DNA from: Styela clava
Taxonomy: Eukaryota
DNA: 64,000 nucleotides
NCBI RefSeq assembly: GCF_964204865.1
Contig: NC_135261.1
Location: forward strand, 1,550,001 to 1,614,000
Direction of reading: 5' to 3'
The notes under the pieces were generated by a model, which ran no database searches, was not told the origin of the DNA, and was given only the letters and a program-made list of their open reading frames with translations. This document shows, piece by piece, positions 41,315-64,000 of the stretch (position 1 is its first letter; each line of letters opens with the position of its first letter). Both the position numbers and the translations under genes were made by a program.

Positions 41315-42409
41315 TTACATTAAAGAGCATCCGCTGCTCTTCTCTATACCTTGATTAATATCATGTAATGCATTTGCAAGTTTCAATGCCTTTCTGGATG
41401 CCTCACAAGCCCAAACCCACTCTGTGGGAATGAATTCGACCCCATAATAAGCCCCAGCTATTGCTCCTGCCATAGAAGCTATCGTGTCAGAGTCATGGCC
41501 AACAGCTGCAGCTGATATAACACAACGCACCATTCCATTGTAACTAGATAACTCAGGTATTTGGTTTCGATTTAAAGTGTATAAAAAGAAAAATATCGCA
41601 GCTGGAACTGATTCAGTGGCACGTACATCCGTCCCGAGTTTTTCAATTATCTCCCCAGGGGAAACCCCATTTTCGGCTTTCAATAAACCAACTACACTTT
41701 CTATTTTTTCTTCGTAAATTTCCAACTCTTCTTTAGCCGGAGTGACTTCTTTCAGCTGTGCAATTAACTCGTGACAGAATTTTTCAGTGTCTTCAATTTT
41801 TCCCGATGTCATAGCTTTTTCAATCGCAAGCGCCTGAAGTACAGCACCATTAATACCCTTCGGATTTGAATGAGTAAGTCTTGATTGGTCCGCAGCAAGA
41901 GCCACCATTTCAGGGATATTATCGTGGTGGAATAACGTGACGGGAGACACACGCATTGCAGATCCATTACCGAACGATCCCGTTCTCATAAATTGTTCGC
42001 TGGCCGCTCTATAAACATCATGTTTGTATTCATCGATTCTTCGTTTCCGAAAACAATCCGTAACATGATTACCGTAGTTCCTACCCAGTGGGGAACGGAA
42101 ATAAGTATCTGAAAAACGCTTAGAAATATCATTGGGATCGTAGATTTTCATCCTGACTAAAGATTCCCCCAGGTCAAAGGTCATGCACGTGTCATCGGTA
42201 TATCGCACATAACCTTCTTCGATGCTAGAAAATCCAGATCTTCGTGCGTCAGTAACTTCGTCATTGATGGTATCATAATATGATTTCACAGTTTCATAAG
42301 GAAGTGTTTTCCAGTCATTTTCAAAGTTAGCTCCCAAACAATCTCCAAATAGTGCACCGAGAGATACTCCTTGAAACTTTGATAAAAGTGTTAATTCTTG
42401 TGCAGCCAT
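41315..42409 (-). CDS. ADPRS: ADP-ribosylhydrolase ARH3-like paralog B (364 aa, intronless CDS, C-terminal CSLM)
   Basis: GALFGDCLGA-FE, YTDDT, GSFGNGSAMRV, LTH, HDSDTIASMAGAIAGAYYG. Start placed at MAAQELTL by comparison with paralog A. Confidence 0.88.
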   Translation of the reverse strand: MAAQELTLLSKFQGVSLGALFGDCLGANFENDWKTLPYETVKSYYDTINDEVTDARRSGFSSIEEGYVRYTDDTCMTFDLGESLVRMKIYDPNDISKRFSDTYFRSPLGRNYGNHVTDCFRKRRIDEYKHDVYRAASEQFMRTGSFGNGSAMRVSPVTLFHHDNIPEMVALAADQSRLTHSNPKGINGAVLQALAIEKAMTSGKIEDTEKFCHELIAQLKEVTPAKEELEIYEEKIESVVGLLKAENGVSPGEIIEKLGTDVRATESVPAAIFFFLYTLNRNQIPELSSYNGMVRCVISAAAVGHDSDTIASMAGAIAGAYYGVEFIPTEWVWACEASRKALKLANALHDINQGIEKSSGCSLM

Positions 42410-45400
42410 TCCCAGATAATATATTAATTTATAACTTTTATTTAGCTGTGAATATATGAAGCAAATGATTAAAACACAGCACAATACAATGATACATATT
42501 CAGAATAAAGAAAATATTACTGCAATGAACTTTATAGTAATACTGTAAACACAAATATTATAGCACAGTAAAAATGCTAGTAGTAATGCTGAGCTGGGAC
42601 TTTCAAAAAAGACTTACCGGTACATATTATGTACAAGTAGTGGCCTCAGTAGGCTTATTAACTCCGAAATAGAGAAATATTAGCTGGGGATGATTGTAAA
42701 TAAGCTATAAACACAAAAATATTGTCTGAACAGAATGCAATGATAGGCAATATTTACATAGATGGAAAATCATAAAAAATTTTATGAACAACCCAACAAG
42801 TACAAAAAAGCAAAAATTTTATTGGTGGACTCAGAAGAGTATTGCAGAGACTCATTACTTATCGATTTTAATTGGTAAGTATGTTGATAGGTATTTGTCT
42901 GTCTGTATGTCTGTTAGATGCACGCCATATCTCACGAAAGCGAGATTGAATCTGCTCCAGATTTTGCATGTGCATTCAAGCGAGTTCTTAATTGATTAGT
43001 GATGGGACGCAAGGTGTCACTATGGAGTGAGGGCGCTGTTTTGGGGGATCCCCTAACTTTCGATCGATAAGTCTTCGGTCTCTGACCGATATTCTCTTTT
43101 GTTTATTATTCCAGACCCACGAGGTCAACATCAAAAACATGAAAATGCAAATAAAGTAGGCAAACTAAATAAAATATTGCAATGCCAACAAAAAAATAAT
43201 TGTAGCAGATCTTGAAAAGAAAATTTTCCCAATAATTAAATATGAACAGATTTATTTTGATAAAATTGTCCCAGGGAGAAGTATACAAATGTAATAGTTT
43301 TCTGACACCCCCTCCATCTTCGAAGTATTCAAAAGTTGAACTTACTAGGTCCAGCACTTGCTAAGAAATTCAATAAGTCTATATCTATGCGATACTTAAG
43401 TCCAGTTTCATGTACACCAATTGAAAAGGCCACATTGATAGCCCATCAGATAAGGTATCTTGGAATCGAATAATGATTGGAAAAGGATGTTAATTGTTTT
43501 TCTGTATCCTGTCAGAAACAATCAAAGATATTTAGTACGAATAAAATAGACATCTTACTGCAAACAGGTAAATTTGAAAAATGAAACAGTAATATTTATA
43601 TTTTAATATATATTAAAAATTTGTACTATAAACTATGAGAATAGCTTGTATTTTAATATAGCTGAAATCATCAATTAGAAGAGCCTATAAATTCACAGCC
43701 CTTTTTAGGAATATTCAAAACAAGGCCGCGAGAACTCAATAAGAAAATAAAGACAATGATGAGTGAATCTATAGAGACGACAACAAAACCCCGAGAGCCA
43801 TTCACCCTACAACGATTCAAGATTTTTTATTCTTTCTACTGTTCTCATTCATTTTATACAGCTTATTAGCAAGTTTCATAGCCTTATCAGAACCCTCACA
43901 AGCTGTGACCCATTCTGATGGGATAGAATCCACTCCATAATATGCGCCAGCTATTGCCCCTGCCATACAAGCAACTGTGTCAGAGTCATGGCTCACAGAA
44001 GTGGCGTAAAGAACAGTTCTAACCATGCCATTGTAAGTTGATAATGTTGGAACATTGTTAGTTTTTAGTGAGTGTAAGAAAAAGAAAATTGCTGGCGGAA
44101 CGGCCTGGATAGCTAACACACCCGTACCAAGTTTCGAGACAATTTCTCTTGGTGTAACTTCACTCTCTTTTTCAAGTAATTCCATCACATTTGACATTCC
44201 ATTTTCAAAAATTTCCATGTCTTCTTTAATAGGTGTGATTTCTTTAAATTGATCTAATAATTCTTGGCAAAATATTTTAGCATTATCAATTTTTCCCGAT
44301 GTCATAGCTTTTTCAATTGCAAGCGCTTGTAGTACGGCACCGTTGATTCCTCTTGGGTTTGTGTGGGTTAGCTTAGATTGCGCAACTACCAAGGTTAACA
44401 TCTCGATAATATTATCATGATGTAACAAAGCAACTGGTGAAACCCTCATAGCGGAACCGTTTCCATAGGAACCAGAACCACCAAACTGTTCACTTGCTGG
44501 TTTATAAACATCACCACGGCAACTGTTTTCTTTCAGTTCACTAAAGACTTTCGCAACATGTTTTCCGTAATTCCTTTCTTTTGGCGAAGCAAAAAACGTC
44601 TCTGTAAATCGCTTAGCGACATCTTGTGGCTTGAACTTCCTATTTTTAGTCAGCGATTTAGCAAGGTCAAAGGTCATGCAGGTGTCATCAGTGTAATGAA
44701 CAAAACCAGAATCAGCTTTTGGTGTTTCCATAGCAACCTTATCTTTGATTGTTTCATAATAAGAGATAACTTTTTCATATGGCAAAATGCTCCAATTATT
44801 TTCAAATTTAGCTCCCAAACAGTCCCCAAATAAAGCTCCGAGAGAAACTCCTTGGAACCTTGACAGAAGAGACAATTCCAATTCTTGAGTTGCCATATTT
44901 AAACCAAGATAACTAAAAATCTGGCATGAACAGTATGTTTATTTGTCACGTAAATAAAAAATTGACTACATTTAAAAGTTAGATGAATATACATATCCTG
45001 TCTTCAACCACAGTATACTGCAATAGCACCAATAACACTCGGCCATTCGTAACGCAAGGCACAGTACCGCATAGTTCTACGATTTCGAGAATAGCCCCAC
45101 ATTGAAAGACATCAATTATAACAGTTAGAGCATACCCTTCCTTTACAAGACGGTTGATTTACAAGACAGTCTGCGACTCCAAGAATAGTCCCACATTGAA
45201 ATATACATCAATTATAACAATAAGTGCAAACCCCTCTATTTAGGACAGTCTGGGCCTCCATATAGGCAAACCGACACTGCAGAATATAATAAAAGCAAGC
45301 GCAATCTAAAAACGTTACCATTGAATTCCTCAGAAAAAAATAGTTTGATTCACCAAAGGAAAAAGTATATTTTCATAGCATTAAGAAAAAAAAACCAACA

Positions 45401-45523
45401 CGATTAATTTAAATCATTACCAGTACCGTATCCGGACAAACATCAGAACATAATGTGATATGGCAGTTGAAGTCTAACTAGGCAATTCAAAATATTAAAA
45501 AAAACCTTGACATCGCAGTTTCA
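42008..45523 (+). repeat. Segmental duplication, copy 1 (direct repeat of 60085-64000)
   Basis: Colinear, near-identical sequence including intergenic DNA. Confidence 0.92.
43817..44896 (-). CDS. ADPRS: ADP-ribosylhydrolase ARH3-like paralog A (359 aa, intronless CDS)
   Basis: Same catalytic motifs: YTDDT, GSYGNGSAMRV, DSDTVACMAGAIAGAYYG. Confidence 0.9.
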   Translation of the reverse strand: MATQELELSLLSRFQGVSLGALFGDCLGAKFENNWSILPYEKVISYYETIKDKVAMETPKADSGFVHYTDDTCMTFDLAKSLTKNRKFKPQDVAKRFTETFFASPKERNYGKHVAKVFSELKENSCRGDVYKPASEQFGGSGSYGNGSAMRVSPVALLHHDNIIEMLTLVVAQSKLTHTNPRGINGAVLQALAIEKAMTSGKIDNAKIFCQELLDQFKEITPIKEDMEIFENGMSNVMELLEKESEVTPREIVSKLGTGVLAIQAVPPAIFFFLHSLKTNNVPTLSTYNGMVRTVLYATSVSHDSDTVACMAGAIAGAYYGVDSIPSEWVTACEGSDKAMKLANKLYKMNENSRKNKKS

Positions 45524-45738
45524 GAGCACGAGTTCAATTTTTTCACCTCAAATATGGTACCGGTACGGTACGGTACCTATCCTAGAGCTCAACTAATCCA
45601 AGATGGATCATCACTGAGACTTAGGTATATAAAATTCATAGTTATGTAGTCTAGCTCTCTGCCTCTCTCTCTTGTCACTTTCATTCTTTTACAAAAATCA
45701 TGACGATAAATACGTAGTACTCTACCACACCTAATTTT

Positions 45739-48207
45739 ACCTAGGTAAAGCTAGCGGCCACTTCCAGCGGACAGTTACCAATTTTTCCAAATTTGAACCC
45801 GCCATGTTCCACGACAGTTGTCGCGAATTCACTTAATTGCGGCTACATGGATGCAAAAAATTAGGTGATTCTCCCTTTTAGAAACTGACGACAGACCTGA
45901 AACATAATAAAAAACAAAAATGATTGAAACAACACATTTTTTCCTCGATAAAATGAATTATTGTTCAGAAGCTCATTTATCGACAAAATCTAAAATTCAA
46001 CTGAGTTGAAGCGTAATTTATGCAAGAAATAATTTTTTCTCATCCAATTCATTAATACAGTGAATTTGATGAAGATATATAAAACATATATTAAATTTTA
46101 AAACAATTCCACTATGCGGAAAGTTGGGAAATACCCCCCAATTAAAGGAAAATTTTTAGGAAATTGTCAAAATAACTCAGTTAAAGCGTCATTTATGCAG
46201 GAAATAATATTTTCTCATCCAATTCAGTAATACAGTGAACAGTACAGTGAAAAAAATGCACCTTGCGGAAAGTAAAAAAATTCCCCCCAGTTTAAGAAAA
46301 AAATATAGGAAATCTCAAATTTAACTCAGTTAAAGCGTAATTTAGGCAAGAAGGAATTTTTTCTCATCCAATTCATTAATGCAGTGTGTTTGGAGGACAA
46401 ATATAAAATACATATTAAAATTTAAAAAAAATCCACCGTGCGGAAAGTAGGGAATTCCCCCTCAATTAAAAAATATATATAAGAAATCGTCAATTTGACT
46501 CAGTTAAAGCGTAATTTAGGTAAGAAGGAATTTTTTCTCATCCAATTCATTAATGCAGTGTGTTTGGTGGACAAATATAAAATACATATTAAAAGTTAAA
46601 AAAAATCCACCATGCGGAAAGTAGCGAAATTCGGTACTCTCGAAATATGGACACAAAGATGACGCACAACCTGAATATAAAAGGTGTACCAGGATAGGTT
46701 CAGAATTAGAATCTAGATTGTACGCTTTTGGGAGCGCAGGGAATAACCCATTTATGCACAAATTAATTTTTTCTCATCCAATTTATTGATACAGTGTATT
46801 TGGTGGACGAATATAAAATACATATTAAAATTTAAAAAAAATCCACCGTGCGGAAAGTAGGGAAATTCCCCTCAATTGAAGAAAAAAATATAAGAAATTG
46901 TCAATTTGACTCAATTAAAGCGTAATTTAGGTAAGAAGGAATTTTTTCTCATCCAATTCATTAATGCAGTGTGTTTGGTGGACAAATATAAAATACATAT
47001 TGAAATTTAAAAAAAATCCACCGTGCGGAAAGTGGGGAAATTCCCCCCAATTTAATGGAAATATTTGAAAAATCGTCTATCCAACTCAGTTAAAGCATAA
47101 TTTATGCAAGAAAAAATATTTTCTCATCAAATTCATTAATACAATGTATTTGGTGGACAGATATAAAATACATATTAAAATTTAAAAAAAATCCACCGTG
47201 CGGAAAGTAGGGAAATTCCCCCCAATTTAATGGAAATATTTGAGAAATCGTCCATCCAACTCAGTTAAAAAATAATTTATGCAGGAAAGAATATTTTCTC
47301 ATCCAATTCATTAATACAGTGTATTTGGTGGACGAATATAAAATACATATTAAAATTTAAAAAAAATCCACCGTGCGGAAAGTAGGGAAATTCCCCTCAA
47401 TTGAAGAAAAAAATATAAGAAATTGTCAATTTGACTCAGTTAAAGCGTAATTTAGGTAAGAAGGAATTTTTTCTCATCCAATTCATTAATGCATTGTGTT
47501 TGGTGGACAAATATAAAATACATATTAAAATTTAAAAAAAATCCACCGTGCGGAAAGTAGGGAAATTCCCCTCAATTGAAGAAAAAAATATAGGAAATTG
47601 TCAATTTGACTCAGTTAAAGCGTAATTTAGGTAAGAAGGAATTTTTTCTCATCCAATTCATTAATGCAGTGTGTTTGGTGGACAAATATAAAATACATAT
47701 TGAAATTTAAAAAAAATCCACCGTGCGGAAAGTGGGGAAATTCCCCCCAATTTAATGGAAATATTTGAGAAATCGTCTATCCAACTCAGTTAAAGCATAA
47801 TTTATGCAAGAAAAAATATTTTCTCATCAAATTCATTGATACAATGTATTTGGTGGACAGATATAAAATACATATTAAAATTTAAAAAAAATCCACCGTG
47901 CGGAAAGTAGGGAAATTCCCCCCAATTAAAAAATATATATAAGAAATCGTCAATTTGTCTCAGTTAAAGCGTAATTTAGGTAAGAAGGAATTTTTTCTCA
48001 TCCAATTCATTAATGCAGTGTGTTTGGTGGACAAATATAAAATACATATTGAAAGTTAAAAAAAATCCACCATGCGGAAAGTAGGGAAATTCGGTACTCT
48101 CGAAATATGGACACAAAGATGACGCACAACCTGAATATAAAAGGTGTACCAGGATAGGTTCAGATTTAGAATCTAGATTGTACGCTTTTGGGAGCGCAGG
48201 GAATAAA
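45739..48207 (+). repeat. Left arm: ~260-bp outer module plus about 12 tandem ~176-bp units
   Basis: Unit CTCAGTTAAAGCGTAATTT..TTCTCATCCAATTCATTAAT..TCCACCGTGCGGAAAGTAGGGAAATTCCC. Confidence 0.92.
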
Positions 48208-48376
48208 TGACCGTCTCACTGCTACTGTTCCCGACAGACAACTCAGTAACAATTCTACCTCTACATGATTCCAAATGGGATATAAAAGTATAATTTATTC
48301 AATCACAAGCAATTAAATAATTTTTATAATTCGTTTGTAACTGTTCTCAAATTTTTTGATCGGCACATACTTTCAG

Positions 48377-49957
48377 ACTATTATTTACTCCTTTCAACTG
48401 ATGACAAAGAATCGCCGTGATGTTTACGTTATGGATAGTTATATTGCTGGTTGTGTTTTTCTCCAACATGCATCACCATCTAATGACTGATGTAAGTCAA
48501 TCTTTCAATCTTTGATGTTTTTAATTTTTCAGGCGGATAGGAAACAACCAATAAATATATCCGAGGCTCGAGAACCCCGGTGTAATTGATATGTATAAGT
48601 TGATTTCATGATTACTTTTGTTACAAAAATATGAAAAAAACAATTTGACGCCGAACACCTCGGATTTGAATGTAAAACTGCTGGAATATACTTGCGGAAC
48701 TATGATCGAAAACCATTGGTATAAACAAAATTAGGGTTGGAAAAATCGACATTGTTTTTTTATCTAAAAAGTCCATATTCATCTTTCCTACAACACTTTA
48801 ATATCATACTTATATCATCTCATTTGTTTTACAGTTAAATTTAGGAAACTATAGCGTGATTGTTTCTGCGTGCAGGATAAATGAAAATCACTGGGTTCTT
48901 TTGCTGAGGATGAAGTTTTGTTTTGAAATTTTAATAATATTCAATAAATAAGAAATTGTTGTGGCAAAATTACATATTGCCTTTTTGTATTTGATTCTTC
49001 ATTTTGATTCGAACAAAATATCTTTGCAATTCATTGACACAACGAGAATTAATTTCTACTTTCTGAATCCGTATGGAGGTTCAATTGAAGAGACCACTCA
49101 CGCATGTGAAAATTATAAGTGAGTTCAATTCCTGAAATACATCTTATCGTTAGCCATTTCAACTACAAGCTAAAGTAGGAACTCAATAAACCTTTACTTC
49201 ACTGTTGCCAGATCGCTTTCAAATCCTGGAGTGGATTTTTTAAAATGATCTTCTTTACAGTTATCCAGTCCTTTATTTTTAATATTCCCTTTCTCTTGTT
49301 GAAAGTATTCGGCTGTTTTTGTAAAAACGTGTCCTGTTCTTACAAGTAATATATAAACTACATAATCACATTGTACCAGTAACAAACTGTATTTACAATT
49401 GGAATGACATTGACAATTGTGAATGACATTGAAATTGAATGAAAAGTATTGATTTTAAAAATCAAGTTACATGAGAAATATATTAGTAAAACTGAATTTA
49501 CACACGTTACAACACACAGAAACTGGATGAATTTACGAAAAGAATGCGAAAACTGGACACCAACGGTTACTGAACATCCCATTCAGAGGGATGGATCCAG
49601 TTGTGGAATTTACGTGATAAAGGTATATAGGAAGTCATACAAATTTAATTATCCATACATCAGTATATGTTCTTTGTCAATTTATTCACAAGTTAAAAAA
49701 TACATTTTTGACAGACTGCGTGGAGACGTACTGCAGTTTTTGTGGGGAGACGGGAGAAGCAGAATGGGTAAGTAACCTAATAGGTGTTCAATAAACATGC
49801 AATATATAATTTTATATTCATGGTATTTTGACTTTTTTTAAAGATTGGCTGTGATGTGTGTCCGCGCTGGTTTCATGCTGGATGCTACAACGGAGATATT
49901 GCGGAGATATTGTACGTACTTTGGAAATGTCCAGCATACGAGGCCGGTTGGCATTAA
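48377..49957 (+). pseudogene. Decayed spliced Ulp1/C48 (SUMO protease-like) peptidase plus PHD finger gene inside the foldback element
   Basis: Exon-like blocks: 48377- TIIYSFQLM..DVYVMDSY; 48835- LNLGNYSVIVSACRINENHWVLL; 49030-49118 FIDTTRINFYFLNPYG; 49520-49622 HPIQRDGSSCGIYVIK; 49715-49767 YCSFCGETGEAEW; 49844-49957 IGCDVCPRWFHAGC..WKCPAY. Shows mutated splice sites, a phase gap and a final PHD Cys read as Tyr. Confidence 0.8.
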
Positions 49958-50068
49958 AACGCATTTGATGTAAAAATAAGTTTCAAAGGGTTGCCACTTG
50001 ACACTAACAAGTAGATCAAATGGCCATTTCCCGTTAACCTGTCCATTGAGTACAGAGCCATGAATATA

Positions 50069-51073
50069 CAGTAGAAGCGCTACCCACGAAATTAATTCGT
50101 TCCGAAGACCCGTCGTATTACATAAGGCGTTTTACCTGTAAATGCCCTAATCCGTTTTAAGTCCACGTAAAACTCGGACATCATTTTCGTATAAATTATA
50201 TTAATGCTTAAAATCCAACAACTACATGTTAGAATTAGATTACAGCATAATAAATAAACAAAGAACATACGGAAGGAAGTAAGAACATAGTAATAACGAA
50301 TAAAAACTAAGAACGGTATGCTTATGTACCTTTGTTTACCATCGTCATAATCAAATGATTGATTCCCAAATTACCGTCCGCCACTGATGGAGAATTAAGA
50401 CCTGAAAACTTGTTTTATTTTTCAAGTCGGTTTTTATTTGATTTGAGTCGGCGCTAATCTTTCATGTCTGGTGTTATTATTTTAATTTTGCTTATTGATA
50501 TCGCCAACTTAAAGTGAACGATATTGTCATCAACGACGTCGGGATAATGATAAAATCCGCGTTAGATATTAAATAACATTTAAAGGTCATTTTATAAACT
50601 CTTAATTGTAAGAAATGAAAAAAATTCCTGTTATGTTCGGTCGCTATCGAAATTGAGGGTGAAAACAATTAATTGCGACACAATTTGCTTTCAGATTTAT
50701 TGGAATAGACGATAATAATTGTGAATATTGTGTAATAATTGTAATTGCGCTTTTTGAATTTCTTTCATGCTGGCCATAATTTAGTGCCACAACGCGCACG
50801 GCTGATTTCAATTGCGATAAAAAATAGAATGGCTGTGAATATTTTTTTTTAAATCGAAAGTTTGACGGCGCTAGGAAATGTGCGTCATATTCGGTATTCT
50901 CAAAAACACCAAAAAAACGATATTCGAAGGTCGCAATATTCAAATATTAGGTTTGTATTGAACATCCCTGCATTAAATTAATCTAAAATGAACAAATATC
51001 ACTATGCAAGTTTTCGGAAAAGAATTGTTGGATTTTTCGTATCCAGAGCCTTTCGTACGGAGAGTTTCTACTG
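50069..51073. mobile_element. Old Tc1/pogo-type (TA TSD) non-autonomous element nested in the foldback core
   Basis: TA-CAGTAGAAGCGCTACCCACGAA ... TTCGTACGGAGAGTTTCTACTG-TA degenerate TIRs. Confidence 0.55.
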
Positions 51074-51736
51074 TATACAAGTTTTTCGTGATATTTTTTG
51101 CTTCCATTTTTTTGTGATTGGCGAATAAAAAACGATTTGTTGATTGATTCATGTGAAAACTTCATTTGGGAATTGAAAGTTTCTTCATACGTTTACAGTG
51201 ATCGTAGCGGCTGCTATCGATCGTATCGTCGTTTCTTCCAACGTCTTAGTACGGTGTGCCATACTTCCTTTAGCTCTTTAATACAGTTTCACAGTCTTTC
51301 AAATTCTGAGATATTTTTTAACAACAGCATTAAAAGGTTCGGCGACATACATACATACATATTCGACATAACAAATGAAGCGCCATAAGTGTCAAATCGT
51401 TACTAATCTTGATGACGCCACCTCATCTGTTAAGGTTGACAATACTATTCTGATTTAGGCTGCTGATGTACTGGGTTAAGGCTGCACGTTCACCTAAGGT
51501 GACCCAAAGATACCAGCATAAGTTACTACTGAGGTTTTAGGGAAGGTAGTGCTATATGGAGTGAGAGGGGGTGTTACGAGGTTGTAGTGTAAACCAATAA
51601 AATGTAATAAGAACATGATAAAACTTCAAAAATAATATTTAGTTATGGAGGAGAATGGGAATGATCAATAAATATGACAAGATTTCGCTTTAATTTATAT
51701 AAATTTACGATTCCGTTGATTTTAACATAAGTTAGA

Positions 51737-54734
51737 TTTCTTAAATATTTCCATTAAATTGGGGGGAATTTCCCCACTTTCCGCACGGTGGATTTTTTTT
51801 AAATTTTAATATGTATTTTATATTCGTCCACCAAATACACTGTATCAATAAATTGGATGAGAAAAAATTATTTTTTGCATAAATGGGTTATTCCCTGCGC
51901 TCCCAAAAGCGTACAATCTAGATTCTGAATCTGAACCTATCCAGGTACACCTTTAATATTCAGGTTGTGCGTCATCTTTGTGTCCATATTTCGAGAGTAC
52001 CGAATTTCCCTACTTTCCGCATGGTGGATTTTTTTTAACTTTTAATATGTATTTTATATTTGTCCACCAAACACACTGCATTAATGAATTGGATGAGAAA
52101 AAATTCCTTCTTACCTAAATTACGCTTTAACTGAGTCAAATTGACGATTTCTTATATATATTTTTTAATTGAGGGGGAATTCCCTACTTTCCGCACGGTG
52201 GATTTTTTTTAAATTTTAATATGTATTTTATATTTGTCCACCAAAAACACTGCATTAATGAATTGGATGAGAAAAAACTCTTTCTTACCTAAATTACGCT
52301 TTAACTGAGTCAAATTGACGATTTCTTATATTTTTTTATTCAATTGAGGGGAATTTCCCTACTTTCCGCACGGTGGATTTTTTTCAAATTTTAATATGTA
52401 TTTTATATTTGTCCACCAAATACACCGTATAAATGAATTGGATGAGAAAATATTCTTTCTTGAATAAATTACGCTTTAACTGAGTTAAATAGACGATTTC
52501 TCAAATATTTTCATCAAATTGGGGGGAATTTCCCTACTTTCCGCATGGTGGATTTTTTTTTTAAATTTCAATATATATTTTATATTCGTCCACCAAATAC
52601 ACTGTATTAATGAATTGGATGAGAAAATATTCTTTCTTGCATAAATTATTTTTTAACTAAGTTGGATAGACGATTTCTCAAATATTTCCATTAAATTGAG
52701 GGGAATTTCCCTACTTTCCGCATGGTGGATTTTTTTAAAATTTTGATATGTATTTTATATCTGTCCACCAAATACATTGTATCAATGAATTTGATGAGAA
52801 AATATTCTTTCTTGCATAAATTATGCTTTAACTGAGTTGGATAGACGATTTCTTAAATATTTCCATTAAATTGGGGGGAATTTCCCCACTTTCCGCACGG
52901 TGGATTTTTTTTAAATTTTAATATGTATTTTATATTCGTCCACCAAATACACTGTATCAATAAATTGGATGAGAAAAAATTATTTTTTGCATAAATGGGT
53001 TATTCCCTGCGCTCCCAAAAGCGTACAATCTAGATTCTAAATCTGAACCTATCCTGGTACACCTTTTATATTCAGGTTGTGCGTCATCTTTGTGTCCATA
53101 TTTCGAGAGTACCGAATTTCCCTACTTTCCGCATGGTGGATTTTTTTTAACTTTTAATATGTATTTTATATTTGTCCACCAAACACACTGCATTAATGAA
53201 TTGGATGAGAAAAAACTCCTTCTTACCTAAATTACGCTTTAACTGAGTCAAATTGACGATTTCTTATATTTTTTTCTTCAATTGAGGGGAATTTCCCTAC
53301 TTTCCGCACGGTGGATTTTTTTCAAATTTTAATATGTATTTTATATTTGTCCACCAATTACACTGTATTAATGAATTGGATGAGAAAATATTCTTTCTTG
53401 CATAAATTATTTTTTAACTGAGTTGGATAGACGATTTCTCAAATATTTTCATCAAATTGAGGGGAATTTCCCTACTTTTCGCATGGTGGATTTTTTTTAA
53501 ATTTTAATATGTATTTTATATTTGTCCACCAAATACATCGTATAAATGAATTGGATGAGAAAATATTCTTTCTTGAATAAATTACGCTTTAACTGAGTTA
53601 AATAGACGATTTCTCAAATATTTTCATCAAATTGGGGGGAATTTCCCTACTTTCCGCACGGTGGATTTTTTTTAAATTTCAATATGTATTTTATATTCGT
53701 CCACCAAATACACTGTATTAATGAATTGGATGAGAAATTATTCTTTCTTGCATAAATTATTTTTTAACTAAGTTGGATAGACGATTTCTTAAATATTTCC
53801 ATTAAATTGAGGGGAATTTCCCTACTTTCCGCATGGTGGATTTTTTTTAAATTTTAATATGTATTTTATATTTGTCCACCAAATATATTGTATTAATGAA
53901 TTGGATGAGAAAATATTCTTTCTTGCATAAATTATGCTTTAACTGAGTTGGATAGACGATTTTCTAAATATTTTCATTAAATTGAGGGGAATTTCCCTAC
54001 TTTCCGCACGGTGGATTTTTTTTAAATTTCAATATCCATTTTATATTTGTCCACCAAACTCATTGCATTAATGAATTGGATGAGAAAAAATTCCTTCTTA
54101 CCTAAATTACGCTTTAACTGAGTTAAATTGGAGATTTCCTATATTTTTTTCTTAAACTGGGGGGAATTTTTCTACTTTCCGCACGGTGGATTTTTTTTAA
54201 ATTTTAATATGTATTTTATATTTGTCCACCAAATACACTGTATTAATGAATTGGATGAGAAAATATTATTTCCTGCATAAATGACGCTTTAACTGAGTTA
54301 TATTGACAATTTCTTAAAAATTTTCCTTTAATTGGGGGGTATTTCCCAACTTTCCGCATAGTGAAATTGTTTTAAAATTTAATATATGTTTTATATATCT
54401 TCATCAAATTCACTGTATTAATGAATTGGATGAGAAAAAATTATTTCTTGCATAAATTACGCTTCAACTCAGTTAAATTTTAGATTTTGTCGATAAATGA
54501 GCTTCTGAGCAATAATTCATTTTATCGAGGAAAAAATGTGTTGTTTCAATCATTTTTGTTTTTTAATATGTTTCAGGTCTGTCGTCAGTTTCTAAAAGGG
54601 AGAATCACCTAATTTTTTGCATCCATGTAGCCGCAATTAAGTGAATTCGCGACAAATGTCGTGGAACATGGCGGGTTCAAATTTGGAAAAATTGGTAACT
54701 GTCCGCTGGAAGTGGCCGCTAGCTTTACCTAGGT
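51737..54734 (-). repeat. Right arm: about 15 inverted ~176-bp units plus outer module
   Basis: Reverse complement of the left-arm units; the outer ~260 bp differ from the left end at only about 4 positions. Confidence 0.92.
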
Positions 54735-55379
54735 CCTAATTTTGCATATTACTATCCTATTATCGTCTACCTCGGGGTGGTCCAAACCCAGGCCCGCGAC
54801 TACAGCCTACCAGGGTACCGGTACCGTATTTCTATAAAATTTCAATTATGTTTTTAACATAGCCTTGCGGAAATAAAATATCTCACTCTCTATAACTGCA
54901 CCGTCATAATTATGGGATGGTTGCGCTAACATTATTCACCGGAAATACGTACGTCTGCTGGAAAGTGAAGTCATGACGTATAATAATAAGTATAAGTTTA
55001 TTCCGACTCCATAATCAGCAATAGACGATAAAAAAATAGATAAAACAAAAGTAAAAGTAACTGATTATAGAATCGGGAAAGTGAACAAAACCTAGAGTAA
55101 GGTTTGAAACGTACAGATTTTAGATGGAAAGGTATTGATAAAAGGAGTAGTACGTGTTCGCTCACCCAAAAGTAAAAAAAAAAATCTAATTAAGGCACAC
55201 ACGCACACGCACACACACAATCATCGAGACATGATACTGTCGGAAGCGGAAAAAGCGAGACTTAAAAGTAAAAAGGAAGGAAAATATACAAACAAATGAA
55301 AAAAAAAATGAATAAATTCTTTTGTCACACCAAATTAATAATTTTATGAGGATTGCCAAATTGGATACCGAATTAGTCA

Positions 55380-60081: not shown

Positions 60082-60486
60082 TTATCTATAAACATCATGT
60101 TTGTATTCATCGATTCTTCGTTTCCGAAAACAATCTGTAACATGATTACCGTAGTTCCTACCCAGTGGGGAACAGAAATAAGTATCTGAAAAACGCTTAG
60201 AAATATCATTGGGATCGTAGATTTTCATCCTGACTAAAGATTCCCCCAGGTCAAAGGTCATGCATGTGTCATCGGTATATCGCACATAACCTCATTCGAT
60301 GCTAGAAAATCCAGATCTTCGTGCGTCAGTAACTTCGTCATTGATGGTATCATAATATGATTTCACAGTTTCATAAGGAAGTGTTTTCCAGTCATTTTCA
60401 AAGTTAGCTCCCAAACAATCTCCAAATAGTGCACCGAGAGATACTCCTTGGGACTTTGATAAAAGTGTTAATTCTTGTGCAGCCAT
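60082..60486 (-). pseudogene. Truncated duplicate of ARH3 paralog B
   Basis: In-frame GAA>TGA at 60292-60294; homology ends after DVYR, where a hAT MITE fragment (59960-~60084) abuts it. Confidence 0.9.
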
Positions 60487-61495
60487 TCCCAGATAATATA
60501 TTAATTTATAACTTTTATTTAGCTGTGAATATATGAAGCAAATGATTAAAACACAGCACAATACAATGATACCAATTCAGAATAAAGAAAATATTACTGC
60601 AATAAACTTTATAGTAATACTGTAAACACAAATATTATAGCACAGTAAAAAAAATTACGGCTATCAATGGTGGAATCGCTACCAGAAAGAAATAAAATAG
60701 GCAGGTAATGCTGAGCTGGGACTTTCAAAAAAGACTTACCGGTACATATTATGTACAAGTAGTGGCCTCAGTAGGCTTATTAACTTCGAAATAGAGAAAT
60801 ATTAGCTGGGGATGATTGTAAATAAGCTATAAACACAAAAAAATTGTCTGAACAGAATGCAATGATAGGCAATATTTACATAGATGGAAAATCATAAAAA
60901 ATTTTATGAACAACCCAACAAGTACAAAAAAGCAAAAATTTTATTGGTGGACTCAGAAGAGTATTGCAGAGACTCATTACTTATCGATTTTAATTGGTAA
61001 GTATGTTGATAGGTATTTGTCTGTCTGTATGTCTGTTAGATGCATGCCATATCTCACGAAAGCGAGATTGAATCTGCTCCAGATTTTGCATGTGCATTCA
61101 AGCGAGTTCTTAATTGATTAGTGATGGGACGCAAGGTGTCACTATGGAGTGAGGGCGCTGTTTTGGGGGATCCCCTAACTTTCGATCGATAAGTCTTCGG
61201 TCTCTGACCGATATTCTCTTTTGTTTATTATTCCAGACCCACGAGGTCAACATCAAAAACATGGAAATGCAAATAAAGTAGGCAAACTAAATAAAATATT
61301 GCAATGCCAACAAAAAAATAATTGTAGCAGATACTGAAAAGAAAATTTTCCCAATAATTAAATGTGAACAGATTTTTTTTGATAAAATTGTCCCAGGGAG
61401 AAGTATACAAATGTAATAGTTTTCTGACACCCCCTCCATCTTCGAAGCATTCAAAACTTGAACTTACTAGGTCCAGCACTTGCTAAGAAATTCAA

Positions 61496-61863
61496 CGAGA
61501 ATATCGGTTGGAAACCCAAGACTTATCGATCGATAGTTAGGGGATCCCCCAAAACAGAAACTGCAGTTTCGATTCATCCACTCTTGTAACTTGCGCATCG
61601 CACACACACACTCGGCGGGTTTCAAAATTCTCTCGCTTTACAAAAATCTAGATCACTATATCAATAATTGATTGATAACTCGCTAATTATACTACATGAT
61701 TCGCCCAAAATCAATAGGCTGCTGGTCCGAGATAAGATGAATGCACATGCAAAATCTGGAGCAGATTTAATCTCGCTTTCGTGAGATATCGCGTGCATCT
61801 AACAGACACACAGACAGACAAATACCTATCAATATACTTACCGATCTTAAGATCGGTAAGTAA
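61496..61863 (-). mobile_element. DINE-1/Helentron-like element (H2) present only in duplicate copy 2
   Basis: Empty site TTCAA|TAAGTCT at ~43373 in copy 1; no duplication beyond an ambiguous AA. Confidence 0.8.
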
Positions 61864-62305
61864 TAAGTCTATATCTATGCGATACATAAGTCCAGTTTCA
61901 TGTACACCAATTGAAAAGGCCACATTGATAGCCCATCAGATAAGGTATCTTGGAATCGAATAATGATTGGAAAAGGATGTTAATTGTTTTTCTGTATCCT
62001 GTCAGAAACAATCAAAGATATTTAGTACGAATAAAATAGACATCTTACTGCAAACAGGTAAATTTAAAAAATGAAACAGTAATATTTATATTTTAATATA
62101 TATTAAAAATTTGTACCATAAACTATGAGAATAGCTTGTATTTTAATATAGCTAAAATCATCAATTAGAAGGCCTATGAATCCACAGCCCTTTTTAGGAA
62201 TATTCAAAACAAGGTCGCGAGAACTCAATAAGAAAACAAAGACAATGATGAGTGAATCTATAGAGACGACAACAAAACACCGAGAGCCATTCACAATATA
62301 ACGAG

Positions 62306-63385
62306 TCAAGATTTTTTATTCTTTCTACTGTTCTCATTCATTTTATACAGCTTATTAGCAAGTTTCATAGCCTTATCAGAACCCTCACAAGCTGTGACCC
62401 ATTCTGATGGGATAGAATCCACTCCATAATATGCGCCAGCTATTGCCCCTGCCATACAAGCAACTGTGTCAGAGTCATGGCTCACAGAAGTGGCGTAAAG
62501 AACAGTTCTAACCATGCCATTGTAAGTTGATAATGTTGGAACATTGTTAGTTTTTAGTGAGTGTAAGAAAAAGAAAATTGCTGGCGGAACGGCCTGGATA
62601 GCTAACACACCCGTACCAAGTTTCGAGACAATTTCTCTTGGTGTAACTTCACTCTCTTTTTCAAGTAATTCCATCACATTTGACATTCCATTTTCAAAAA
62701 TTTCCATGTCTTCTTTAATAGGTGTGATTTCTTTAAATTGATCTAATAATTCTTGGCAAAATATTTTAGCATTATCAATTTTTCCCGATGTCATAGCTTT
62801 TTCAATTGCAAGCGCTTGTAGTACGGCACCGTTGATTCCTCTTGGGTTTGTGTGGGTTAGCTTAGATTGCGCAACTACCAAGGTTAACATCTCGATAATA
62901 TTATCATGATGTAACAAAGCAACTGGTGAAACCCTCATAGCGGAACCGTTTCCATAGGAACCAGAACCACCAAACTGTTCACTTGCTGGTTTATAAACAT
63001 CACCACGGCAACTGTTTTCTTTCAGTTTACTAAAGACTTTCGCAACATGTCTTCCGTAATTCCTTTCTTTTGGCGAAGCAAAAAACGTCTCTGTAAATCG
63101 CTTAGCAACATCTTGTGGCTTATACTTCCTATTTTTAGTCAGCGATTTAGCAAGGTCAAATGTCATGCAGGTGTCATCAGTGTAATGAACAAAACCAGAA
63201 TCAGCTTTTGGTGTTCCCATAGCAACCTTATCTTTGATTGTTTCATAATAAGAGATAACTTTTTCATATGGCAAAACGCTCCAATTAGTTTCAAATTTAG
63301 CTCCCAAACAGTCCCCAAATAAAGCTCCGAGAGAAACTCCTTGGAACCTTGACAGAAGAGACAATTCCAATTCTTGAGTTGCCAT
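62306..63385 (-). CDS. ADPRS: ARH3-like paralog A, second intact copy (359 aa, 6 aa differences)
   Basis: Open, full-length ORF with catalytic motifs intact. Confidence 0.88.
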   Translation of the reverse strand: MATQELELSLLSRFQGVSLGALFGDCLGAKFETNWSVLPYEKVISYYETIKDKVAMGTPKADSGFVHYTDDTCMTFDLAKSLTKNRKYKPQDVAKRFTETFFASPKERNYGRHVAKVFSKLKENSCRGDVYKPASEQFGGSGSYGNGSAMRVSPVALLHHDNIIEMLTLVVAQSKLTHTNPRGINGAVLQALAIEKAMTSGKIDNAKIFCQELLDQFKEITPIKEDMEIFENGMSNVMELLEKESEVTPREIVSKLGTGVLAIQAVPPAIFFFLHSLKTNNVPTLSTYNGMVRTVLYATSVSHDSDTVACMAGAIAGAYYGVDSIPSEWVTACEGSDKAMKLANKLYKMNENSRKNKKS

Positions 63386-64000
63386 ATTTAAACCAAGATA
63401 ACTAAAAATCTGGCATGAACAGTATGTTTATTTGTCATGTAAATAAAAAATTGACTACATTTAAAAGTTAGATGAATATACATATCCTGTCTTCAACCAC
63501 AGTATACTGCAATAGCACTCGGCCATTCGTAACACAAGCCACAGTACGGCATAGTTCTACGATTTCGAGAATAGCCCCACATTGAAAGACATCAATTATA
63601 ACAGTTAGAGCATACCATTCCTTTACAAGACGGTTGATTTACAAGACAGTCTTCGATTCCAAGAATAGCCCCACATTGAAATACATCAATTATAACAATA
63701 AGTGCAAACCCCTCTATTTAGGACAGTCTGGGCCTCCATATAGGCAAACCGACACTGCAGAATATAATAAAAGCAAGCGCAATCTAAAAACGTTACCATT
63801 GAATTCCTCAGAAAAAAATAGTTCGATTCACCAAAGGAAAAAGTATATTTCCATAGCATTGAGAAAAAAAAACCAACACGATTAATTTAAATCATTACCG
63901 GTACCGTATCCGGACAAACATCAGAACATAATGTGATATGGAGTTAAAGTCTAACTAGGCAATTCAAAATATTAAAAAAAACCTTGACATCGCAGTTTCA

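What the first reader, a model, noticed from the sequence alone, without database searches (positions are those of the whole stretch)
45730..54743. 9-kb foldback transposon with multi-kb satellite-built inverted arms and a 9-bp TSD
Seen: perfect TSD CCTAATTTT, palindromic ACCTAGGT termini and a ~260-bp outer module about 98% identical between ends. Inside that sit ~12 (left) versus ~15 (right) tandem ~176-bp units in inverted orientation around a 3.5-kb core. Established: 9-bp TSDs with long modular TIRs are typical of Foldback/Mutator (MULE) elements. Inference: the ends are young while the core is badly decayed and lacks a recognisable transposase, so the element was probably mobilised in trans by an autonomous partner elsewhere. 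It also disperses a nucleosome-length satellite. It sits ~840 bp upstream of the ARH3-A start codon, in the presumed promoter region.
Basis: partly seen in the sequence, partly recalled or inferred. Interest (0 to 1): 0.78.

Follow-up and report, generated by a model that had tools for sequence, protein, structure and literature searches.

The report
Foldback transposon with satellite arms
A 9-kb jumping gene in the sea squirt Styela clava has long mirror-image arms built from a 175-base repeat and carries only a broken gene remnant, so another element must move it; it is a good example of a known kind.

Summary
Window 45739-54734 is a real 8,996-bp foldback-type DNA transposon flanked by the 9-bp duplication CCTAATTTT. 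A paralogous, uninterrupted site just past the window end holds a single CCTAATTTT.

The genome is Styela clava, by public protein records. It holds 53 such termini, forming 23 convergent pairs of 4.5-18 kb. Of 17 pairs read, 11 have perfect 9-bp duplications and 4 have perfect 8-bp ones.

Each arm is a ~255-bp terminal module plus a variable number of 175-bp units, interrupted by a 117/132-bp spacer.

The 3.5-kb core is as well conserved as the ends. It holds no transposase. It holds a truncated, spliced Ulp1-like protease/PHD-finger gene tail and a nested Tc1/mariner-like MITE.

No autonomous partner was found, so the superfamily is unproven:
- Mutator sensu lato (Rehavkus/Foldback-like), about 0.55. 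Supported by the 8/9-bp duplications, the tandem-repeat arms and the PHD finger.
- Zisupton derivative, about 0.3. Supported by the multi-exon Ulp1-PHD tail.

The element lies 842 bp upstream of an ADP-ribosylglycohydrolase gene.

This is a new member of a known kind. Other readers of this scan noted the same family elsewhere in this genome.

The parts
45730..45738 (.). left copy of the 9-bp target-site duplication CCTAATTTT
   Evidence: The paralogous empty site holds one copy only.
45739..45993 (+). left terminal module (~255 bp, non-repetitive), beginning with the palindromic ACCTAGGT
   Evidence: 98% complementary to 54480-54734 (I12). 40 scored genome matches at 96-100% identity, from 73 candidates.
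45994..48092 (+). left satellite arm: ~11 units of 175 bp in three blocks (45994-46237, 46250-46632, 46765-48092), with a 132-bp spacer module at 46633-46764
48093..48206 (+). inner spacer module, the innermost part of the inverted repeat; its mirror lies at 51888-52001
   Evidence: (I8 reaches 48206/51888) and the sequence.
48207..51735 (+). unique core, 3,529 bp, with no transposase. The window copy lacks ~280 bp at about 49691 that 13 of 14 other copies keep.
   Evidence: Loose ends of run X5 at 49691/49692.
48420..48491 (+). first exon of the cargo transcript (ATG at 48420, short hydrophobic peptide), donor GT at 48492
   Evidence: A GT..AG joint 48491>48835 in one contig of run X9. Frame worked out by hand. 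The donor is GTAAGT in 14 of 16 anchor matches.
48835..48903 (+). exon with the Ulp1/C48 'NHW' histidine motif. In this copy the donor is CT, not GT.
   Evidence: The donor is GT in 6 and CT in 8 of 14 copies.
49520..49622 (+). exon with the C48 catalytic-cysteine region (QRDGSSCG)
   Evidence: Public models P0002/P0011 start here. Pfam Peptidase_C48 E 0.0038, 17.5 bits, below the 20.7 cut-off. Atlas nearest clusters are Ulp1+PHD.
49715..49766 (+). first PHD-finger exon (CVETYCSFCGETGEAEW)
   Evidence: A GT..AG joint 49766>49843 in one contig of run X7. P0002.
49843..49957 (+). last exon: second half of the PHD finger, plus the stop codon
   Evidence: Pfam PF00628: E 1.1e-5 on the exon alone and 1e-7 on P0002. 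PDB CHD4 PHD E 1.2e-5.
50065..51077 (.). nested ~1-kb Tc1/mariner-like MITE (27-nt inverted ends TATACAGTAGAA..., TA on both sides), present in the family founder
   Evidence: I1. 799 first-look candidates genome-wide at 65-80% identity. High, patchy depth in the RNA-like runs.
51736..54479 (-). right satellite arm: ~14 units of 175 bp (51736-51869, 52002-52981, 53114-54479), with 132-bp spacers at 51870-52001 and 52982-53113
54480..54734 (-). right terminal module, ending ...ACCTAGGT
54735..54743 (.). right copy of the target-site duplication CCTAATTTT

Best explanation
This is one copy of a middle-aged, non-autonomous foldback-type cut-and-paste DNA transposon family of Styela clava, with about 23 paired copies.

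Structure. Each end is a ~255-bp terminal module followed by a variable array of 175-bp repeats punctuated by a spacer module. The two ends are mirror images.

Origin (inferred). The family descends from a conventional long-TIR element whose gene ended in a Ulp1-like protease and a PHD finger. Three things then happened:
- an internal deletion removed the transposase and left only the gene's tail;
- a MITE landed in the core;
- the subterminal repeat expanded into kilobase arms.

Movement (inferred). A DDE transposase made elsewhere binds the terminal module, and perhaps the repeats. It cuts the element out and inserts it with an 8- or 9-nt staggered cut, which gives the 8/9-bp duplications.

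Superfamily. The most likely source of that transposase is Mutator sensu lato (Rehavkus/Foldback-like).

Confidence by step:
- Real transposon insertion with a 9-bp duplication: about 0.98.
- Non-autonomous deletion derivative: about 0.9.
- Mutator-s.l./Rehavkus-like superfamily: about 0.55. The figure given as the overall confidence is this last, weakest step.
For: Shown:
- Exact insertion. The paralogous empty site has the left flank aligned to L061:30-196 and the right flank to L061:188-240. The overlap is 9 nt, a single CCTAATTTT.
- Family size. 53 termini against 0 controls.
- Duplications in 17 pairs read: 11 perfect 9 bp, 4 perfect 8 bp, 1 imperfect, 1 unreadable.
- Length variation. 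Lengths of 5.1-15.4 kb come mostly from arm length; cores are ~3.5-3.9 kb in most copies.
- No ORF above 110 aa in the cores except junk frames.
- No PF10551 hit inside any member.
- The cargo is a gene tail. Public S. clava models of 82-140 aa cover the Cys exon through the PHD finger.
- A single-copy older relative (L059, C3) has the same terminal module at 74% identity and the same tail, plus the C48 N-terminal motif that the family lacks. It has no satellite arms, and its gene ends ~400 bp from the terminus.

From papers (passages read):
- The animal MULE Muta1 makes 8- or 9-bp duplications in yeast (PMC5225508).
- Tm1, a Mutator/Foldback family with a transposase, has 8-10 bp duplications, mostly 9 (PMC3169594).
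[quoted passage not shown] By coordinates only:
- Two loci have a PHD-like exon 44% identical to residues 69-100 of P0002, lying ~1.1-1.2 kb upstream of a PF10551 exon on the same strand: C6:21869297/21870586 and C2:20470252/20469143. PHD-bearing MULEs therefore appear to exist in this genome.
Against: - No transposase was tied to this family. None of the 74 matches to the 17-nt terminus lies within 10 kb of a PF10551 or PF02902 hit.
- The PHD-plus-MULE loci have the PHD upstream of the DDE domain, not at the gene's end.
- A many-small-exon gene ending in Ulp1 is what papers and other agents' notes describe for Zisupton, not for animal MULEs.
- Exon-by-exon Pfam searches miss domains split over ~30-aa exons, so the negative searches are weak either way.
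- No shared word of 8 nt or more links the terminal 120 nt with the 175-bp unit or the spacer. I have no evidence that the repeats carry transposase sites.
Confidence: 0.55

Rival explanations
1. The family is a foldback-shaped, non-autonomous derivative of a Zisupton (KDZ) transposon. The Ulp1-PHD tail is what remains of a multi-exon Zisupton transposase gene, and a Zisupton transposase moves the family.
For: - The cargo is built of many small exons of 52-115 nt with short introns.
- It carries a Ulp1-like domain followed by a PHD finger.
- Zisupton is described as multi-exonic, with 18-31 exons and proteins up to 1,400 aa (PMC9297572, passages).
- Other agents' notes on this genome report young multi-exon Zisupton elements encoding transposase-SUMO protease-PHD, and foldback-looking non-autonomous Zisupton derivatives (s1-809848, s1-813326, s1-819817). 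I did not check these myself.
- Giant ORFs of 1,013-1,851 aa containing C48 but no PF10551 hit exist in the genome.
Against: - Zisupton is reported to make 8-bp duplications (PMC12730594, passages). Here 11 of 17 are 9 bp and only 4 are 8 bp.
- Kilobase tandem-repeat arms are described for Mutator-related, Rehavkus and P-type elements, not for Zisupton, in the papers I read.
- The tail is only 32-33% identical over 56-65 aa to the long C48/PHD ORFs.
- PF18758 gave no hit, but its control was silent, so that result is uninformative.
Confidence: 0.3
2. The family belongs to another superfamily with 7-9-bp duplications: Merlin, P/Galileo-like or hAT.
For: - Merlin elements have 8- or 9-bp duplications and TIRs up to 462 bp, and some carry internal tandem repeats. 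Merlin occurs in Ciona (PMC8101967, passages).
- Galileo shows that foldback arms can arise in the P superfamily (PMC3573991 and PMC3688188, abstracts in the listing).
Against: - Merlin termini are reported to begin 5'-GG (PMC8101967). These begin 5'-AC.
- P/Galileo and hAT make 7-8-bp duplications (recalled), while most here are 9 bp.
- Nothing in the cargo resembles THAP, hAT or IS1595 domains.
Confidence: 0.1
3. It is not a mobile element but an assembly artefact or a local palindromic duplication.
For: Long inverted and tandem repeats are hard to assemble. I could not lay reads across the arms.
Against: - 23 convergent pairs on many chromosomes, each with its own flanking duplication.
- A paralogous empty site with a single CCTAATTTT.
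- Contigs of two other organisms' runs hold the core at 95-99% identity.
Confidence: 0.01

Closest known systems
Rehavkus foldback DNA transposons (grouped with MULEs), e.g. Rehavkus-1_TC and Rehavkus-3_TC of Tribolium
   Same: - 9-bp duplications.
[quoted passage not shown]
- A PHD finger in the encoded protein.
- The repeats travel with the element.
(PMC6446971 Table 1 and PMC12581902, passages read.)
   Different: - Rehavkus is reported only from arthropods and annelids; this family is in a tunicate.
- No transposase is present here, so kinship is untested.
- A Ulp1-like domain is not mentioned for Rehavkus in the passages I read.
- Some duplications here are 8 bp.
Tetris, foldback transposon of Drosophila virilis
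   Same: - The arm has an outer domain, ~220-bp internal tandem repeats and an inner domain.
- 8-9 (to 10) bp duplications.
- No ORF and no autonomous partner found.
- Assigned to Mutator from duplication length alone.
(PMC4079207, passages.)
   Different: - Tetris repeats also form free kilobase satellite arrays; I saw none here.
- Tetris has only 3 complete copies; this family has about 23 pairs and a conserved core with a gene tail.
Tm1, Mutator/Foldback family of root-knot nematodes
   Same: - Composite TIRs of variable length built of tandem repeats.
- Duplications of 8-10 bp, mostly 9.
- Many non-autonomous forms.
(PMC3169594, passages.)
   Different: - Tm1 repeats are 13-15 bp, not 175 bp.
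- Tm1 has members with a 496-aa Mutator-like transposase; none was found here.
Drosophila FB (Foldback) and Galileo
   Same: Long, internally repetitive inverted arms. Cores that differ between copies or are missing.
   Different: - FB repeats are tens of bp (recalled).
- Galileo has a P-type transposase with a THAP domain (abstracts) and, as I recall, 7-bp duplications.
Zisupton (KDZ) transposons
   Same: - A multi-exon gene.
- In this genome, by other agents' notes, a transposase ending in a SUMO protease and a PHD finger.
   Different: - 8-bp duplications are reported (PMC12730594).
- No foldback arms are described in the papers read.
- No KDZ domain was found here, though that search was uninformative.

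Membership tests
Foldback-type elements (structural class) | Long inverted arms that are internally made of tandem repeats and vary in length between copies | tested here: met
   Arms of 1.2-7 kb built of 175-bp units in the window copy and all 16 other fetched copies.
Foldback-type elements (structural class) | Flanking target-site duplication, showing transposition | tested here: met
   15 of 17 pairs have perfect 8- or 9-bp duplications. Paralogous empty site.
MULE superfamily (Mutator sensu lato) | Duplications of 8-10 bp, usually 9, with long TIRs | tested here: met
   11 of 17 are 9 bp and 4 of 17 are 8 bp. The terminal module is ~255 bp at 98%. Criterion as written in PMC5225508 and PMC3169594.
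MULE superfamily (Mutator sensu lato) | A DDE transposase of the MULE type, in the element or in a partner sharing its termini | tested here: not met
   None of the 82 PF10551 hits lies inside a member or within 10 kb of any of the 74 terminus matches. This is a weak negative: the search is exon by exon, and the partner may be absent from this assembly.
Rehavkus group | 9-bp duplication | tested here: met
   The majority class, 11 of 17; 4 of 17 are 8 bp.
Rehavkus group | [quoted passage not shown] | tested here: met
   Definition from PMC12581902.
Rehavkus group | PHD finger in the transposase | tested here: inconclusive
   A PHD finger ends the cargo gene (PF00628, E 1e-7), but no transposase is attached to it.
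Rehavkus group | Transposase groups with Rehavkus in a DDE phylogeny | not testable with these tools
   No transposase is in hand and no Rehavkus reference sequence is available.
Zisupton / KDZ | KDZ transposase domain (PF18758) | tested here: inconclusive
   0 hits in the genome, but the control genomes were also silent.
Zisupton / KDZ | 8-bp duplication | tested here: not met
   Only 4 of 17 are 8 bp; 11 of 17 are 9 bp. Criterion from PMC12730594.
Zisupton / KDZ | Multi-exon gene | tested here: met
   At least 6 small exons with GT..AG joints or public models. Trait from PMC9297572.
Merlin | Termini beginning 5'-GG, with 8-9-bp duplications | tested here: not met
   The duplication length fits, but the termini begin 5'-ACCTAGG. 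Criterion from PMC8101967.

The most novel reading that the evidence does not exclude
The lost autonomous ancestor combined traits that the literature assigns to two separate groups.
- Rehavkus/Mutator traits: 9-bp duplications, a PHD finger, and foldback arms of tandem repeats.
- Zisupton traits: a many-exon gene and a Ulp1 SUMO-protease domain.

If so, the Ulp1-PHD-tailed transposases of this sea squirt would form a bridging lineage. They would either show that foldback architecture arose in a third superfamily, or show that Rehavkus-like and Zisupton-like transposases are closer kin than current classifications say.
Probability: 0.15. Interest if true: 0.65.

Novelty: new member of a known kind. 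Interest (0 to 1): 0.36.

Why it matters
- **A clean case for chordates.** It is a well-bounded, multi-copy foldback family in a chordate relative. My paper searches found foldback elements described only for insects, nematodes and plants. The search 'foldback + transposon + ascidian' found 0 papers, and a Styela clava transposon search found none on this.
- **Origin of satellite arms.** The older armless relative and the 23 armed copies give a before-and-after view of how a 175-bp satellite is born in subterminal DNA and carried round a genome.
- **Arm-to-arm homogenisation.** Diagnostic bases are shared by both arms of the same element in 15 of 16 elements, which suggests the two arms are kept alike.
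- **Annotation.** NCBI annotates the cargo tails as host genes ('uncharacterized protein', 'PHD finger protein ALFIN-LIKE 3-like'). These are transposon remnants.
- **A natural experiment.** The insertion sits 842 bp upstream of one ARH-like paralogue, while its 98%-identical duplicate has the empty site. This pair tests the effect of a 9-kb palindromic insertion on a promoter.

Tried and rejected
**Searches for the partner transposase that found nothing**
- PF10551 in the genome: 82 hits, none in or near a member.
- PF18758: 0 hits, control silent.
- PF02902: 42 hits, none in members.
- Terminus patterns.
- Exon and P0002 protein searches in the genome. Apart from family copies they found a single relic on C3, a 56%-identical PHD exon at C4:22370691, and remote families.
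- Pfam on 10 core ORF pieces gave only PHD.
- Pfam on 20 ORFs upstream in the relic L059 gave nothing.
- A DNA search with L059:3700-5450 hit only a nested high-copy repeat with 2,090 candidates. That used my last own-genome search.

**Wider sequence searches**
- The search of protein representatives with the PHD exon: 9 hits, of which only P0001 and P0002 are relevant.
- The search for homologous proteins with P0011: only those same two clusters.
- The search for related loci, viral contigs: none.
- The search for related loci, metagenomes: one 20-aa match, L060, which I did not analyse.
- PDB: PHD hits only, no SENP/Ulp1 hit.

**Ideas considered and dropped**
- The 18-kb C2 copy as the autonomous master. 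The room upstream of its C48 exon is the same as in the window copy, so its extra ~8.7 kb is probably a nested insertion. I did not read it.
- Flip-flop inversion of the core. A base variant (alignment column 263, allele A) sits on the gene-3' arm in 8 of 8 arms that carry it.
- The 175-bp unit deriving from the terminal module. No similarity was found.
- A motif scan for ARH genes on the wrong side of the element found nothing. The gene is on the minus strand to the left.

**Paper searches**
- One search was badly framed and useless.
- The original Zisupton paper is not held.
- I asked for no supplementary files. Those of PMC6446971 (Additional file 4), PMC12581902 (Fig. S14, S16) and PMC3169594 (Tables S1-S4) may bear on the Rehavkus and Tm1 comparisons.

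Full report
**What is there**

The window holds an 8,996-bp element at 45739-54734.
- Its tips read ACCTAGGTAAAGC... inward from both sides, and CCTAATTTT lies directly outside each tip.
- The outermost 499 nt of the two ends are 98% complementary. The inverted repeat continues, with lower identity and shifting register, to 48206 on the left and 51888 on the right.
- Inside the ~255-bp terminal modules, Tandem Repeats Finder finds 175-bp arrays at 87-90% matches.
- BLAST against one unit gives about 11 units on the left and 14 on the right. A 117/132-bp spacer module interrupts them and also forms the innermost part of each arm.
- The arms are AT-rich, 29-30% G+C against 35-38% nearby.
- The unique core is 48207-51735.

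**Proof that it is an insertion**

The region 42008-45523 is duplicated at 60085-64000 with 97.8-98.7% identity. The equivalent of the insertion site therefore lies about 215 bp past the window's end.

I fetched those 500 bases (L061). They read straight through ...TACTCTACCACA CCTAATTTT GCATATT.... The left flank aligns up to L061:196 and the right flank from L061:188. The 9-nt overlap is a single CCTAATTTT.

The element therefore entered after the duplication, at an exact point, and made a 9-bp duplication.

**The family**

Public protein records identify the genome as Styela clava.

- The terminal 262 bp finds 40 scored matches of 73 candidates at 96-100% identity.
- The 32-nt tip, with up to 3 mismatches, occurs 26 times forward and 27 times reverse, against 0 and 0 for the reversed control.
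- These form 23 convergent pairs 4.5-18 kb apart, plus 7 unpaired ends.

I fetched 16 pairs besides the window's. Duplications in the 17 pairs were:

| Result | Pairs |
|---|---|
| Perfect 9 bp | 11 |
| Perfect 8 bp | 4 |
| 9 bp with one indel (C14) | 1 |
| Unreadable, left tip rearranged (C3) | 1 |

. The 8-bp cases are true 8-mers, not mutated 9-mers.

- Length differences come mostly from the arms.
- Fourteen cores match the window core at 95-99% over most of its length. C17b keeps only the last 700 nt. The C2:16173399 copy has a different 1.7-kb core.
- The window copy lacks about 280 nt at ~49691 that 13 of 14 copies retain. Contigs of run X5 show loose ends exactly there.
- Terminal modules are 97.96% identical between the two ends of one element and 97.46% identical between elements. 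The family is young but not brand new, and the core is no more decayed than the ends.

**Arms**

A conserved 24-nt word of the unit occurs 874 times in the genome, against 0 for the control.
- 605 of these lie in my 17 elements.
- All 100 places that the tool listed lie inside paired elements.
- I therefore see no free satellite arrays, though 774 places were not listed.

Two variable columns of the terminal module carry the same base in both arms of an element in 15 of 16 elements. Three haplotypes exist. A change arising in one arm must therefore have been copied to the other at least twice. I infer arm-to-arm conversion.

A third variant sits only on the arm next to the gene's 3' end, in 8 of 8 arms that carry it. 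The core therefore does not flip freely. The 'both orientations' seen are simply insertion orientations.

**Core and cargo**

No ORF pieces in the core match a transposase. On the plus strand there is a spliced gene tail.
- Runs X7 and X9 of the same organism are RNA only by the tool's guess. Each contains one contig with a GT..AG joint, 49766>49843 and 48491>48835 respectively.
- A third joint, 48902>49519, is non-canonical on the window copy. It becomes GT..AG in the 6 of 14 copies that have G at 48904. It skips an exon and shifts the frame (my arithmetic).
- NCBI's models for family copies (P0001, P0002, P0010-P0015; 82-140 aa) join the Cys exon, an exon lying in the 280 nt that the window lacks, and two PHD exons.
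- Pfam calls the PHD finger at E 1e-7. It calls Peptidase_C48 only weakly (E 0.0038, 17.5 bits, cut-off 20.7).
- The protein Atlas puts P0002 next to Ulp1+PHD clusters, mostly from chordates, with score 0.96 and 200 of 256 features shared.
- The first exon encodes a short hydrophobic peptide unrelated to C48, and the protease's N-terminal part is absent. The tail cannot be a working protease.

The right half of the core holds a ~1-kb element with 27-nt inverted ends TATACAGTAGAA... and TA on both sides. It belongs to a repeat with 799 first-look candidates. It is a nested Tc1/mariner-like MITE, present in the founder.

**An older relative**

The only close relative of the tail outside the family is a single decayed copy on C3 (L059).
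- Its PHD exon is 67-70% identical to the window's, and its DNA is 74-85% identical.
- It keeps the C48 N-terminal motif (LRPNKWLTGEV).
- Its gene ends about 400 bp from a terminal module that aligns with the window's at 74% and starts ACCTGGGCAAAGCTAGC.
- It has no satellite arms.

This supports descent from an ordinary long-TIR element, followed by internal deletion and arm expansion.

**Who moves it**

I found no partner.
- None of the 82 MULE-domain hits or 42 C48 hits lies in a member or within 10 kb of any of the 74 matches to a 17-nt terminus pattern (control 9).
- The KDZ model was silent everywhere, controls included.
- These searches work exon by exon and miss domains split into small exons.
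Several candidate loci could therefore not be read.

**Comparison with known kinds** (passages read in each paper)

- Rehavkus elements are grouped with MULEs. They have 9-bp duplications, TIRs of 26-400 bp, a PHD finger and a minisatellite, and are known from arthropods and annelids (PMC6446971).
- In Tribolium, Rehavkus elements are foldback transposons whose inverted termini are TIRs plus variable numbers of tandem repeats. Some arms exceed 11 kb (PMC12581902).
- Tetris has the same three-part arm, 8-10-bp duplications and no known partner (PMC4079207).
- Tm1 has mostly 9-bp (8-10 bp) duplications and a Mutator-like transposase (PMC3169594).
- Muta1 makes 8- or 9-bp duplications experimentally (PMC5225508).
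- Zisupton makes 8-bp duplications (PMC12730594) and is multi-exonic (PMC9297572).
- Merlin makes 8-9-bp duplications but has 5'-GG tips (PMC8101967).

On duplication length, arm design and the PHD finger, the family fits Mutator sensu lato best, and Rehavkus most closely. On gene structure and the Ulp1 domain, it fits what other agents of this scan call Zisupton in this genome (s1-809848, s1-819817), which I did not verify. I put the two at about 0.55 and 0.30.

**Other species and expression**

- Contigs of organism B (run X5) cover 29 of 30 bins of the core: 20 contigs at 99% identity or more, 64 at 95-99% and 70 at 90-95%, of 154 laid.
- Contigs of organism C (run X6) cover 20 of 30 bins.
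- The family, or close kin, is therefore not confined to one sample. The organisms are coded, so I cannot say how far apart they are.

**Context**

The left end lies 842 bp upstream of the ATG (44896, minus strand) of a 359-aa ADP-ribosylglycohydrolase ORF (PF03747, E 2.7e-53). A second paralogue lies at 41315-42484. Whether the insertion alters expression is untested. The duplicate copy with the empty site is the natural control.

**Verdict**

This is a real and well-documented foldback transposon. It is non-autonomous and of a known kind, new for tunicates as far as my searches go. Its superfamily is still open.

Noticed in passing
window 50065-51077: A nested ~1-kb MITE with 27-nt inverted ends (TATACAGTAGAA...) and TA on both sides. 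It is related at 65-80% identity to a dispersed repeat with at least 799 candidates in the genome, some arranged as inverted pairs. It explains the high, patchy depth in the RNA-like runs.
   Followed up: partly
window 42008-45523 and 60085-64000: A segmental duplication at 97.8-98.7% identity that carries ADP-ribosylglycohydrolase paralogues: ORFs 43817-44896(-) and 41315-42484(-), and a third copy near 62.5-63.6 kb(-). The foldback element interrupts only one of the two copies.
   Followed up: partly
L039:999-3847 (G000:C14, left arm of another family copy): A 2.8-kb insertion inside the satellite arm with an open 625-aa pogo/Tc5-type transposase (DDE_1 E 3.2e-20, HTH_Tnp_Tc5 E 0.0014).
   Followed up: partly
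L059:3730-5025 (G000:C3:3915729-3917024): A very abundant ~1.3-kb dispersed repeat nested in the relic element: 2,090 first-look candidates, with copies 94-96% identical.
   Followed up: no
G000:C6:21869297-21870891 and C2:20469143-20470353 (coordinates only): A PHD-like exon lies ~1.1-1.2 kb upstream of the best-scoring MULE (PF10551) exon on the same strand at two loci. This is a possible PHD-bearing, Rehavkus-like MULE family. I could not read it.
   Followed up: no
G000:C2:16173399-16179515 (L045) and C16:12736392-12741216: Family members with the same arms but other cores. One has an unrelated 1.7-kb core. The other has the right-hand core piece present in both orientations.
   Followed up: no
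NCBI models XP_039262751.1, XP_077971342.1, XP_039256183.1 and others (P0002, P0011, P0012): The transposon's gene tails are annotated in RefSeq as host genes ('uncharacterized protein', 'PHD finger protein ALFIN-LIKE 3-like').
   Followed up: yes
G000:C17:11623488, C14:10987192, C9:5504085, C14:380619, C2:20709211, C6:6146206, C2:4933827: A young family of open ~680-700-aa frames containing a C48-end plus PHD stretch, 32-37% identical to the cargo tail. I could not read them, and their nature is unknown.
   Followed up: no
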